A stretch of DNA of 64,000 bases, from positions 2,480,001-2,544,000 of the forward strand of contig OZ116711.1 of assembly GCA_964199315.1 (NCBI GenBank), written 5' to 3'. Positions 8,001-11,000 of this stretch are shown in pieces. The stretch is from Orbicella franksi. Lineage: Eukaryota. The translations under genes were made by a program, and so were the position numbers. The notes beneath the pieces were generated by a model. That model was given only the letters and a program-made list of their open reading frames with translations, was not told where the DNA came from and did no database searches. Each line of letters opens with the position of its first letter. Position 1 is the stretch's first letter.

Positions 8001-11000
8001 CCTGTAATCTGATTTGGTTCTTAGTGTGGTTCGGATTTTCCTATCTTTCCATAAAGCTTTCCTGAGTTTTAAAAGGGATTTGAGAGCAAGGAAAAACAAA
8101 GAAGTTACATTTATTTACCCACTGCTGCTAGGGTCAGCTCATATAAACAAAAACTGTGACCTCAAACTTGAAAATGCGGGGCAAGAGGAGCATGATATCC
8201 ATGCCTGCAGACAAGTTTTGTGGATATTTTCACAGTGAGAATAGCCATTTAACTTTCCTCTCACTCTTCATGCAGTCTTACTTTCTTGCCAAACAAACTG
8301 GAAACAAGAGTGACTTAGCACCTTCCTTTATAGGTCAACGTTTAGTCCACTATAATCCACCAAGGAGTTTAAGAACTGTTGGAAAATGAAATTAATGTCC
8401 GATCACTCGAGCAAAAGGTTCCTGTTGTAGGTACTGAAGGCCAGAAGAACCTGTTACCCTGCATCTAACCTAAACTGCACTGCCTCTTCTCTGCACTATT
8501 ACCTCTTAGAAGGTCAGCCAAAGAATCATCCACTTCTTCAGGGACTGTAAACTCTCCTCTGCCAATATTTTCAAACAATTTATAGATATTCTCTCCTTCA
8601 AAGGGATATTTTCCCGTAGTAATGTTGAACCTGGGAAATATTACAGATGTTTATACAAACTAAGAATTCAAATTAAAAACAAACCTGGCTGAGGAGATGT
8701 TCATAGCCCTACACAAAAGTGCTTGCCTGTGATCAACTTGACATAAACCATTTGTGAGGAAAATATCAAATTAAAGTTGTTTACTAAACTAAAAACCGAG
8801 CCAAATTCAAAACCACAACACAAAACACAAAGCTTAATAATATTTAATTGCCTCCACAATAATTAATTTGTTCTTTTATATATCAGAATCCATAAATTAA
8901 AATTCATGGCATGCCAAACACCTACAGTGTGACTCCAGCAGCCCATATGTCAACTTTAAATCCAGAAAACGTTTCTAAGCCATTTGCAATCTCTGGTGGT
9001 TGGAAAGCAGGAGAACCCTGGCTTGTCCTACAAGTGTCGTCAACAGCAAATGGTTCCAACCGCTACAGCAACAAAAAGTAGTTGAGAAACACTCATTGAC
9101 TCGAAATAGCACCATTTTCACATCAAAAATGTGAAAAATGTGGGCTCACTTAAGAAACATCCCTGGAGGATCTCCATGTAATTTAAGCAAGGTGAACACC
9201 CATAATTACTTACCAGAATCCCACTTAGGAGAGAGGTATGATTTGAATTGAATTAGGAGGTCTTTTGATGGATGAGTGCTCTGTGAAACTAGCAGAGCTG
9301 CACAGTGCAGAGTGCAGAGAAAAACCGGTTGTGAATACAGAGAGCATGATACATGTACATGTACAGTCAAAGTGAGAGTGCAAAGTATAGAAGACCTTTT
9401 TAGCTTGGGAGATTTGTTGTCCCATTTCAGACCATGTGATGATACTCTTGGGAATTCTTGCTTTCATATTGTCGAATAGTCATGTGTATATGAATGAATA
9501 ATTTTTAGACCGTCCAGGTGTTCTGTGGACAGCCACTTTTTAAAGAAAATTGTTTTATTTTTCATATGTTTCTTTATAATTGTTCATTTGAGCAGGCCCT
9601 ATAGCGCATTTTGGATGACCACTAAAAGCCTGCTGTTTTACATGGATAAAAGAACAATTCTCTACAGGATATCACATGGTCTGAAATGGGAAAACAAAAT
9701 GCCTAAGTGAAAAAGGTCTATTGACTAGTATACTGGGGAATGCAAAGCACAAAGTGTGTATTCATGTACAGCTGTTTTGAGCAAGATTGGCCTCAAAAGT
9801 GTAAGAGTGCATGTGGCAATGCTGAAAGTTAAGTTGTATGTATTATGGCAAGAAGTGGTTGCTGTTGTTTGATCAAATTACACAGCATTTCAAGGCAAAG
9901 AAAGATGAAGCCACAGATAAAACTATTAATTATTTCTTCTTCTATCGGGCTAAAAACCCCTGAGAACTTTGACCAACCACTGGTAAATTACTGACACTAC
10001 GCATAACTCATTTTGGCTTTGCTGCAAACTGTAAATCCTCTGTTAAGCCCCCCCCCCCACCCCTCTAAAGTGCTCCCCCTTATTCCAAGGAAGAAAGTTA
10101 TTAAGCCCCCCCCCCCCTCCCCCTTATTCCACACAATCAAGTTGATCAATAATAGACTGTATTTGTAATGTCATCCCAACTGTAACACTTCACGTCAACT
10201 GATCCGGGATGGTTTATTCACATGTTGAAAGCTGGAATTTGTTTTTTATCTTGGGCTGATTGACCTCGAACTCTTTTCCATATAAGACAGGCATTGTCCT
10301 GGTCCAAAACAGGAAGTACAATGTAGGTAAGCATAACCCTAGTCTGTTTCTTCCTCCTTTTTTGTTACTGGTAATGCGTTTTGCTAGGAATTAAATGAGC
10401 CCCCCCTCTCTCATAAGCCCCCCTCAAAAGTGCTTAAAATAAACAAGCCCCCCGGGGGCTTAATAGAGGATTTACGGCAAATACATTCTTAAGTTTATTT
10501 TTAGGACAACCTTTCCTGAAATAGCTGTAATACAAGGTAACAAACAAGCAGAGTAAGAACTGTTAGTGACCATGCACTGAGCAGAAGAACATAAATTTTC
10601 CTTGGCCCAATATACTAACTTTATACTACTATATACTAACCTCAGCAACTCCAAAGTCTGATATTTTTAATGTCCCATCAGTGGCAAGAAGTAAATTGCC
10701 TGGTTTGATATGTAGCCTTAGTTAAGGTTAATTAATATCAAACATGACTTTCCTCTAGGGTTGTCTGCTGTCGGTACATTTTGACAGAACTGCCAACAAA
10801 GCTTAAGGTATACATGTACATGTAACTTGCTGAGATCTTTATTTAACTAAACAGGCAACTTAACAGAGTGAGTAATAATCATTTGAAATGAGTATCTGGC
10901 ACAAAATATATTATTTACAGCAATCCAAAAAGATATCTTTATGGATAATTCCTTGACAGTGTAAGTACCCAAGACCATTTAGCAACTGACGAAAATACCT

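What the first reader, a model, noticed from the sequence alone, without database searches (positions are those of the whole stretch)
10712..10936. Extra AT-AC minor-spliceosome intron splits the catalytic Asp codon of STK11
Seen: no GT-AG solution keeps the frame; the exon reads ...IIHK-G|ATATCTTT...TAACCTTAAC-taaggct-AC|AT ATC AAA CCA, restoring HKDIKP. The halves (62+71 nt) sum to 133 nt, the size I recall for the uninterrupted human exon 4. Established: U12 introns have RTATCCTT 5' sites and CCTTAAC branch sites and are rate-limiting. Inference: an ancestral U12 intron lost in vertebrates or a rare lineage gain; retention gives a stop 8 codons in, so minor splicing could gate kinase output. 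GT-AG-only annotators would mis-call this gene.
Basis: partly seen in the sequence, partly recalled or inferred. Interest (0 to 1): 0.78.

Follow-up and report, generated by a model that had tools for sequence, protein, structure and literature searches.

The report
Second minor-spliceosome intron in coral STK11
A coral's STK11/LKB1 kinase gene carries a real, efficiently spliced 225-base AT-AC (U12-type) intron inside the codon of its catalytic aspartate; stony corals and sea anemones share it and every bilaterian checked lacks it, so it is a sound but fairly ordinary extra minor intron.

Summary
On the minus strand, 10936..10712 is a 225-nt phase-1 intron with AT-AC ends. It splits the Asp codon of the HKD catalytic loop of a single-copy, 412-aa STK11/LKB1 ortholog in a stony coral.

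- **Splicing:** PolyA RNA-seq reads skip exactly these 225 nt (36, 33 and 2 reads in three runs, plus one contig). Neighbouring junctions have similar counts, and no alternative joint was seen.
- **Motifs:** The 5' site is ATATCTTT. The branch site CCTTAAC lies 9 nt before the AC, with no pyrimidine tract.
- **Machinery:** The genome encodes U11, U12, U4atac and U6atac.
- **Conservation:** The same intron, mostly with a perfect ATATCCTT, sits at the same position in Nematostella, Acropora digitifera and five other hexacoral contigs.
- **Absence:** It is missing in a hemichordate, an annelid, a cephalopod, a spider and about 35 other distinct animal sequences on metagenome contigs. Hydra's gene has no introns at all.
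- **Second U12 intron:** The known STK11 U12 intron 2 is also present, here as the GT-AG subtype.

In-frame GT-AG solutions do exist, but none keeps the HKDIKPGN motif. Retention is low (about 2-5%), so the "gating" idea has no support.

Whether the intron is ancestral or a cnidarian gain is unresolved, because no sponge, placozoan or octocoral DNA could be reached. The scan's earlier notes list only this same stretch. I rate it a new member of a known kind, of modest interest.

The parts
5041..13736 (-). STK11/LKB1 ortholog. The coding span has 10 coding exons and encodes 412 aa ending in CKAQ.
   Evidence: Gene model built. Junctions for exons 1-7 are confirmed by reads. PDB matches to STK11. 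The protein is 89-91% identical to the Stylophora and Oculina STK11 proteins. The gene is single-copy in the genome.
10937..10998 (-). Exon 4a (62 nt). It encodes [20 protein letters not shown] plus the first base (G) of the Asp codon.
10712..10936 (-). U12-type AT-AC intron, 225 nt, phase 1, inside the Asp codon of the HKD catalytic loop.
   Evidence: Spliced reads. Sequence. Orthologous introns. Single copy in the genome.
10929..10936 (-). 5' splice site ATATCTTT. It matches 7 of 8 positions of the U12 consensus ATATCCTT, with C>T at +6.
   Evidence: The T at +6 also appears in an independent metagenome contig, L022, and in an RNA-run contig that spans the intron (table 8, record 4). Related corals have ATATCCTT.
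10721..10730 (-). Branch-site box TAACCTTAAC. CCTTAAC ends 9 nt before the 3' terminal AC, and there is no polypyrimidine tract.
   Evidence: Orthologs have CCTTAAC, CCTTGAC or CCTTAAT at 9-10 nt.
10712..10713 (-). 3' terminal AC of the intron.
10641..10711 (-). Exon 4b (71 nt). It encodes the rest of the Asp codon (AT) and then [23 protein letters not shown].
11467..13141 (-). Intron 2, the conserved STK11 U12-type intron, here of the GT-AG subtype (GTATCCTTTA ... ACCTTAAC, 15 nt, AG). It is 1675 nt long, phase 2.
   Evidence: Joint 11463->13139 (cut +3) has 48 and 44 reads in X23 and X24. The position equals human c.374/375 (PMC12366057).

Best explanation
Window 10936..10712 (minus strand) is a genuine U12-type, minor-spliceosome AT-AC intron. 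It is 225 nt long, phase 1, and interrupts the codon of the catalytic-loop aspartate (HKD; Asp176 in human numbering, from my own knowledge) of a single-copy coral STK11/LKB1 gene.

Inferred mechanism, from established knowledge of minor splicing:
- U11 pairs with the 5' site ATATCTTTTT. The C>T at +6 would still give a G-U wobble with the U11 5' end AAAAGGG.
- U12 pairs through its GUAAGGAAAAU box with CCTTAAC, bulging a branch adenosine about 10 nt from the 3' AC.
- U4atac/U6atac.U5 then complete catalysis.

The intron is removed constitutively and efficiently in the sampled tissues, joining G|AT to restore HKDIKPGN. The gene therefore carries two U12-type introns: this one, and the deeply conserved intron 2.

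The intron dates at least to the common ancestor of stony corals and sea anemones (Hexacorallia) and is absent from every bilaterian examined. I lean about 60:40 towards an old intron lost once in the bilaterian stem rather than a cnidarian gain.

Shown: the splice junction, the motifs, the presence of the snRNA genes, and the taxonomic distribution. Inferred: dependence on the minor spliceosome, and the direction of the evolutionary change.
For: - **Splicing:** polyA RNA-seq from two studies plus one contig run skip exactly 225 nt, with 36, 33 and 2 reads and a contig at depth 87. These counts match the neighbouring junctions.
- **Register:** only one of the six possible cut registers gives canonical ends, namely AT-AC.
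- **Motifs:** the 5' site matches the U12 consensus at 7 of 8 positions. CCTTAAC lies 9 nt before the AC and there is no pyrimidine tract, whereas all seven U2-type introns of the gene have GT..AG ends and T-rich tracts.
- **Machinery:** the genome encodes U12 (100 bits), U6atac (113 bits), U11 (90 bits) and U4atac (54 bits), all above the Rfam cut-offs. The U11 and U12 pairing boxes are intact.
- **Orthologs:** an AT-AC intron sits at the identical codon position, with ATATCCTT and CCTTRAC 9-10 nt before the AC, in Nematostella (633 nt), Acropora digitifera (739 nt), an ENA coral contig (857 nt) and metagenome coral contigs (212, 215 and 1160 nt, plus one with the acceptor only).
- **Absence elsewhere:** exon 4 is uninterrupted in Ptychodera, Paralvinella, Caerostris and Argonauta, and in the roughly 35 other distinct animal sequences that show this motif among about 55 metagenome contigs.
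- **No repeat, no second copy:** the intron sequence is single-copy, and there is no second STK11 copy or retrogene.
Against: - Dependence on the minor spliceosome is inferred from motifs, not tested.
- The 5-nt ATATC repeat leaves the exact cut formally ambiguous in reads.
- The +6 T departs from the consensus.
- This genome's U6atac carries GCCGA where most species have AAGGA, the box proposed to pair with the 5' site. The U6atac-5' site pairing therefore cannot be drawn in the textbook way. This is the known 'CC variant' of cnidarians (PMC2396436).
- No DNA from sponges, placozoans, ctenophores, octocorals or intron-bearing medusozoans could be reached, so the direction of change (loss or gain) is open.
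Confidence: 0.9

Rival explanations
1. The intron acts as a regulated gate. Slow or conditional minor splicing leaves it in the transcript, where a stop follows 8 codons in, and so controls how much active LKB1 is made.
For: Retention would truncate the kinase inside the catalytic loop. A few unspliced reads lie in the intron (mean depth 2.1 in X23 and 0.9 in X24), while intron 3 and the unique parts of intron 2 show none. The +6 C>T weakens the 5' site relative to sister corals.
Against: Intronic depth is only about 5% and 2% of exonic depth (about 44 and 41) and rests on 1-3 reads. Junction counts equal those of the U2-type neighbours. No condition series was examined. Sister species have a perfect consensus site.
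Confidence: 0.1
2. Evolutionary reading A: the intron is a lineage-specific gain of a U12-type intron in the cnidarian, anthozoan or hexacoral stem.
For: It is present only in Hexacorallia among the taxa I could reach. It is absent from five or more bilaterian phyla that keep the gene's other intron positions over exons 1-8 (the last intron was not compared). A loss in the short bilaterian stem would therefore be the only loss seen in this gene.
Against: U12 gains are reported as extremely rare, with one clear case in 18 metazoan genomes (PMC2831892). Ancestral minor-intron densities are estimated to be at least as high as in minor-intron-rich living species (PMC10639083). No outgroup was tested here. 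The intron is not a repeat or introner.
Confidence: 0.35
3. It is a U2-type (major-spliceosome) AT-AC or otherwise non-canonical intron, not a minor one.
For: Rare U2-dependent AT-AC introns exist (PMC1557818, abstract). The exon base at -1 is G.
Against: The 5' site is ATATC[C/T]TT, not the ATAAGT-like site I recall for that rare class. A consensus U12 branch box sits 9-10 nt from the 3' end in all nine sequences, and there is no pyrimidine tract.
Confidence: 0.03
4. It is an artefact: the 225 nt are an assembly insertion or an indel polymorphism, or the joined reads come from a processed second copy.
For: The tool could not report whether the joined form also occurs in DNA runs (table 5b).
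Against: The intron is present in an independent metagenome contig of the same species (L022) and in seven other hexacoral sequences. An RNA-run contig spans it unspliced. The genome holds one copy of the intron and one copy of exon 5. The reads are polyA RNA that also carry the other exon-exon joints.
Confidence: 0.01

Closest known systems
Human STK11/LKB1 intron 2, the AT-AC U12-type intron whose mutations cause Peutz-Jeghers syndrome (Hastings et al. 2005, cited in PMC12366057)
   Same: Same gene and same intron class. The coral gene keeps this intron too, at the same phase-2 position after the 84-nt exon 2.
   Different: The finding is a second U12 intron two exons further on, inside what is exon 4 in humans. 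Intron 2 itself is GT-AG in stony corals (window, L010, Acropora) but AT-AC in Nematostella, Ptychodera and human.
Genes with several U12-type introns, such as the voltage-gated ion-channel alpha subunits (PMC2831892)
   Same: One gene depends on the minor spliceosome at two introns.
   Different: The multiple U12 introns of the channel genes are attributed to internal or whole-genome duplication. Here the two introns lie in unrelated positions of a single kinase domain.
The lineage-enriched minor-intron complement of corals (Acropora minor-intron density is above that of most vertebrates; PMC10639083)
   Same: A coral minor intron with no human counterpart is expected from that survey.
   Different: In the papers I could search, nothing names this particular intron, its position in the catalytic Asp codon, or its distribution.

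Membership tests
U12-type (minor-spliceosome) intron, AT-AC subtype | Precisely excised from mature mRNA | tested here: met
   a 225-nt skip in 36, 33 and 2 reads plus one contig. No competing joint was seen.
U12-type (minor-spliceosome) intron, AT-AC subtype | AT-AC (or GT-AG) terminal dinucleotides | tested here: met
   Of the six registers allowed by the ATATC repeat, only AT-AC is canonical. Eight orthologs also have AT-AC ends.
U12-type (minor-spliceosome) intron, AT-AC subtype | Extended 5' splice-site consensus RTATCCTT | tested here: met
   ATATCTTT in the window (7 of 8 positions). ATATCCTT in every ortholog except L022, which is the window's own species.
U12-type (minor-spliceosome) intron, AT-AC subtype | Branch-site box TCCTTRAC close to the 3' end (about 10-15 nt) and no polypyrimidine tract | tested here: met
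   CCTTAAC lies 9 nt before the AC. Orthologs have CCTTAAC, CCTTGAC or CCTTAAT at 9-10 nt.
U12-type (minor-spliceosome) intron, AT-AC subtype | Host genome encodes U11, U12, U4atac and U6atac | tested here: met
   All four are above the Rfam gathering scores.
U12-type (minor-spliceosome) intron, AT-AC subtype | Base-pairing of the sites with the species' own snRNAs | tested here: inconclusive
   The U12 box GUAAGGAAAAU and the U11 5' end AAAAGGG are intact. U6atac has GCCGA instead of AAGGA, which is the known cnidarian CC variant.
U12-type (minor-spliceosome) intron, AT-AC subtype | Splicing depends on minor-spliceosome components | not testable with these tools
   This needs knock-down or inhibition experiments.
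STK11/LKB1 ortholog | Sequence orthology to STK11 across the kinase domain and the C-terminal CAAX-like end | tested here: met
   PDB STK11 is the best specific match. The protein is 89-91% identical to named coral STK11 proteins and 72% to Nematostella's, and ends CKAQ. Exon 1 retrieves STK11 proteins.
STK11/LKB1 ortholog | Shared exon-intron architecture | tested here: met
   Exons are 84/90/133 (62+71)/137/128/58 nt. The same intron positions appear in Ptychodera, Paralvinella, Argonauta and Caerostris. The matching human exon sizes are from my own knowledge.
Pan-metazoan conserved intron position | Intron at the same position in bilaterian orthologs | tested here: not met
   Exon 4 is uninterrupted in all bilaterian loci examined. 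Hydra's gene is intronless.

The most novel reading that the evidence does not exclude
The intron is a clean, datable gain of a U12-type AT-AC intron in the stem of Anthozoa or Hexacorallia, inserted into the catalytic Asp codon of a gene that already held a U12 intron. That would be one of very few well-supported minor-intron gains in animals.
Probability: 0.35. Interest if true: 0.55.

Novelty: new member of a known kind. Interest (0 to 1): 0.32.

Why it matters
- **Two minor introns in one gene:** in stony corals and sea anemones the LKB1 tumour-suppressor/AMPK-kinase gene depends on the minor spliceosome at two introns. Any change in minor-spliceosome activity would hit this metabolic master kinase twice.
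- **Annotation:** this is a concrete annotation trap. Four public gene models of this gene lose or garble the catalytic loop because of it.
- **Evolution:** the sharp contrast between hexacorals and bilaterians makes this a convenient single-gene test of whether minor introns can be gained in animals. A handful of outgroup genomes would settle it.
- **Mechanism:** these organisms carry the U6atac 'CC variant'. A well-expressed AT-AC intron with a natural +6 C/T difference between sister species is a handy substrate for asking how that variant recognises the 5' splice site.

Tried and rejected
- **GT/GC-AG alternatives:** I listed every in-frame combination between exon 4a and exon 4b. There are 13, none keeps HKDIKPGN and none is seen in reads.
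- **Introner or transposon origin:** the 225 nt occur once in the 497-Mb genome.
- **ATATC repeat as a target-site duplication:** rejected. One coral contig (L034) has ATATT in the exon. Intron-less species use all six Asp-Ile codon pairs, and GATATC is common among them. The repeat is therefore a coincidence of codons and the 5' site.
- **Second STK11 copy or retrogene as the source of joined reads:** none found.
- **U6atac anomaly as something new:** it is the published 'CC variant'.
- **Genomic look-ups that returned nothing:** Stylophora PFX14355.1, Exaiptasia KXJ13911.1, Babylonia isoform X2 and Ornithodoros isoform X2.
- **Outgroups:** two rounds of cluster naming gave no sponge, placozoan, ctenophore or octocoral protein. 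After 12 look-ups no further eukaryotic genome DNA could be fetched. The metagenome scan added five hexacoral contigs and many bilaterian host contigs, but no identifiable non-bilaterian outgroup.
- **Other U12 introns in the window:** a motif scan found no complete U12-like intron beyond the two in STK11.
- **Not done:** intronIC scoring and any second read-laying run (the cap is one call).

Full report
**What is there.**
The window's minus strand carries a complete STK11/LKB1 gene (ATG at 13736, stop at 5041). It has 10 coding exons of 338/84/90/62/71/137/128/58/176/95 nt and encodes 412 aa ending in CKAQ. The organism is a stony coral. RNA runs holding the stretch are labelled coral metagenome. 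The protein is 89-91% identical to the Stylophora pistillata and Oculina patagonica STK11 proteins. The genome is 497 Mb.

At the finding's coordinates, exon 4a ends ...CAT AAA G (10937). The next 225 nt run from ATATCTTTTTGG to TAACCTTAAC-TAAGGCT-AC (10936..10712). Exon 4b then resumes AT ATC AAA CCA (10711). Joining the exons restores HKDIKPGN. The joined 44-aa peptide aligns end to end with human STK11 structures 8vsu_C and 2wtk_C.

**Is it spliced?**
Yes. I laid three polyA RNA-seq raw-read runs (two studies) and one contig run on 8400-13800. The joint 10706->10932 skips 225 nt, and 5 nt fit on either side. That is the ATATC repeat, so the cut can lie at 10712-10936. The joint has 36 reads (X23), 33 reads (X24), 2 reads (X21) and a contig at depth 87 (X2). 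The five neighbouring junctions have 28-62 reads in X23 and X24, so this intron is removed about as efficiently as the others. No other joint with at least 3 reads lies between exons 4a and 4b.

Mean depth inside the intron (bin 10753-10933) is 2.1 in X23 and 0.9 in X24, against about 44 and 41 in exon 4b. That is 2-5%, resting on one to three reads. Intron 3 and the unique part of intron 2 show zero.

**Which class of intron?**
Six cut registers are compatible with the reads. Only one has canonical ends, and that one is AT-AC. The 5' site ATATCTTT matches the U12 consensus ATATCCTT at 7 of 8 positions. CCTTAAC ends 9 nt before the terminal AC. There is no pyrimidine tract, whereas the seven U2-type introns of the gene all have GT..AG ends and T-rich tracts.

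The genome encodes all four minor-specific snRNAs above the Rfam cut-offs:

| snRNA | Copies | Best score (bits) |
|---|---|---|
| U12 | 2 | 100 |
| U6atac | 2 | 113 |
| U11 | 2 | 90 |
| U4atac | 1 | 54 |

U12 keeps its branch-site box GUAAGGAAAAU, and U11 keeps its 5' end AAAAGGG. The +6 T would form a G-U wobble with U11; this is my inference.

U6atac reads GCCGA where most species have AAGGA, in both gene copies, which are the only ones in the genome. This is the published 'CC variant' of cnidarians, Trichoplax and a sponge, whose pairing with the 5' site is unexplained (PMC2396436).

Dependence on the minor spliceosome is therefore strongly indicated but not tested.

- 'No GT-AG solution keeps the frame' is inexact. 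Thirteen in-frame, stop-free GT/GC-AG combinations exist, but every one deletes or replaces part of HKDIKPGN.
- 'Retention gives a stop 8 codons in' is right: DIFLDCCK, then a stop.
- '62+71=133' is right. Bilaterian orthologs have that exon uninterrupted.
- 'GT-AG-only annotators would mis-call this gene' is borne out:
  - Stylophora PFX14355.1 skips exons 2, 4a and 4b.
  - Exaiptasia KXJ13911.1 skips exons 2-4.
  - The Nematostella v1 model reads HKDILFQPSN.
  - An Oculina RefSeq model reads HKDILSGN.
  - RefSeq models for Stylophora, Acropora digitifera and Exaiptasia have the correct join.
- The intron is thus already implicit in some public annotations, though no paper I could search names it.

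**The other U12 intron.**
The known STK11 U12 intron is also present, after the 84-nt exon 2 (human c.374/375; PMC12366057). It spans 13141..11467, with GTATCCTTTA at the 5' end and ACCTTAAC, 15 nt, then AG at the 3' end. Its junction has 48 and 44 reads in X23 and X24. It is GT-AG in the window coral, in L010 and in Acropora. It is AT-AC in Nematostella and Ptychodera, as in humans.

**Distribution.**
An AT-AC intron sits at the identical phase-1 position, with CCTTRAC 9-10 nt before the AC, in the following sequences:

| Source | Intron length (nt) |
|---|---|
| Nematostella vectensis | 633 |
| Acropora digitifera | 739 |
| ENA coral contig L010 | 857 |
| Metagenome contig L022 (same species as the window, same +6 T) | 225 |
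| Metagenome contig L089 | 215 |
| Metagenome contig L034 | 212 |
| Metagenome contig L025 | 1160 |
| Metagenome contig L026 | acceptor only |

All except the window species and L022 have a perfect ATATCCTT.

Exon 4 is uninterrupted in these taxa:
- Ptychodera flava (hemichordate);
- Paralvinella palmiformis (annelid);
- Caerostris extrusa (spider);
- Argonauta hians (cephalopod);
- the roughly 35 other distinct animal sequences that show the motif, spread over about 55 metagenome contigs, some of them transcript-like. By their sequences and sample series they look like gutless-worm, termite, fish and tunicate hosts; that attribution is my guess.

Hydra vulgaris STK11 is a single 1314-nt exon and is uninformative.

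The gene's other intron positions over exons 1-8 are shared between the coral and these bilaterians; the last intron was not compared.

The intron sequence is single-copy in the genome, so it is not an introner. STK11 itself is single-copy.

**Origin.**
One event explains the pattern either way: a loss in the bilaterian stem, or a gain in the cnidarian, anthozoan or hexacoral stem.
- The literature favours loss. U12 gains are very rare (PMC2831892), and ancestral minor-intron densities are estimated to be at least as high as in minor-intron-rich living species (PMC10639083).
- Against loss, this gene's other compared introns show no loss in five bilaterian lineages.

I put the odds at about 60:40 for ancestral and then lost. 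No sponge, placozoan, ctenophore, octocoral or intron-bearing medusozoan DNA could be reached.

**Function.**
The constitutive reading fits the data. Nothing here supports regulated retention, but no stress or developmental series was examined.

**Verdict.**
This is a real, well-supported U12-type AT-AC intron, a second minor intron in STK11, conserved across Hexacorallia and absent from Bilateria. It is a new member of a known kind. It is of modest interest to specialists in minor-intron evolution and useful as an annotation warning. Corals are already known to be rich in minor introns, so its existence is not surprising.

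Noticed in passing
L003:1501-1628 and L004 (own genome, contig C3, at 10958990 and 10892305): Both U6atac genes of this coral, which are the only ones in the genome, read GAGCCGAGAGAAGG where the Rfam consensus is GAAAGGAGAGAAGG. The AAGGA box proposed to pair with the 5' splice site is GCCGA. This is the 'CC variant' already described for cnidarians, Trichoplax and a sponge (PMC2396436). How it recognises ATATCCTT sites remains unexplained.
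   Followed up: yes
window 11467-13141 (-); L014, L015, L016, L010: The conserved STK11 U12 intron 2 has switched subtype. It is GT-AG in stony corals (window, L010, Acropora digitifera) and AT-AC in Nematostella and Ptychodera, as in humans.
   Followed up: partly
L008:2001-3314: Hydra vulgaris STK11 is encoded by a single uninterrupted 1314-nt exon, so all ancestral introns are gone. It looks like replacement by a retrocopy or wholesale intron loss.
   Followed up: no
window 11477-11838: Inside intron 2, just upstream of its branch site, RNA depth jumps to 8,600-23,800 in the contig run and 12-25 in the raw-read runs. Many loose ends lie at 11632-11688. This is a highly repeated, transcribed element, which fits the scan's own note of a SINE tail there.
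   Followed up: partly
P0002, P0050, P0303, P0297 (public gene models): Four public STK11 models from hexacorals lose or garble the catalytic loop around the two U12 introns. Stylophora PFX14355.1 and Exaiptasia KXJ13911.1 skip exons. Nematostella v1 reads HKDILFQPSN. Oculina RefSeq reads HKDILSGN.
   Followed up: yes
window 10929-10940: The +6 C>T change makes the exon/intron boundary AAAGATATCTTT a perfect 12-nt palindrome containing GATATC. A plus-strand motif scan therefore finds a mirror-image pseudo 5' site at 10933. This is probably of no consequence.
   Followed up: no
window 10698, 9039, 8570, 13467, 13721, 13774: Differences at about 50% frequency appear in the RNA reads of X23 and X24, for example 10698 G>C, which is a synonymous GGC>GGG in exon 4b. 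They look like heterozygous or population alleles rather than RNA editing.
   Followed up: no
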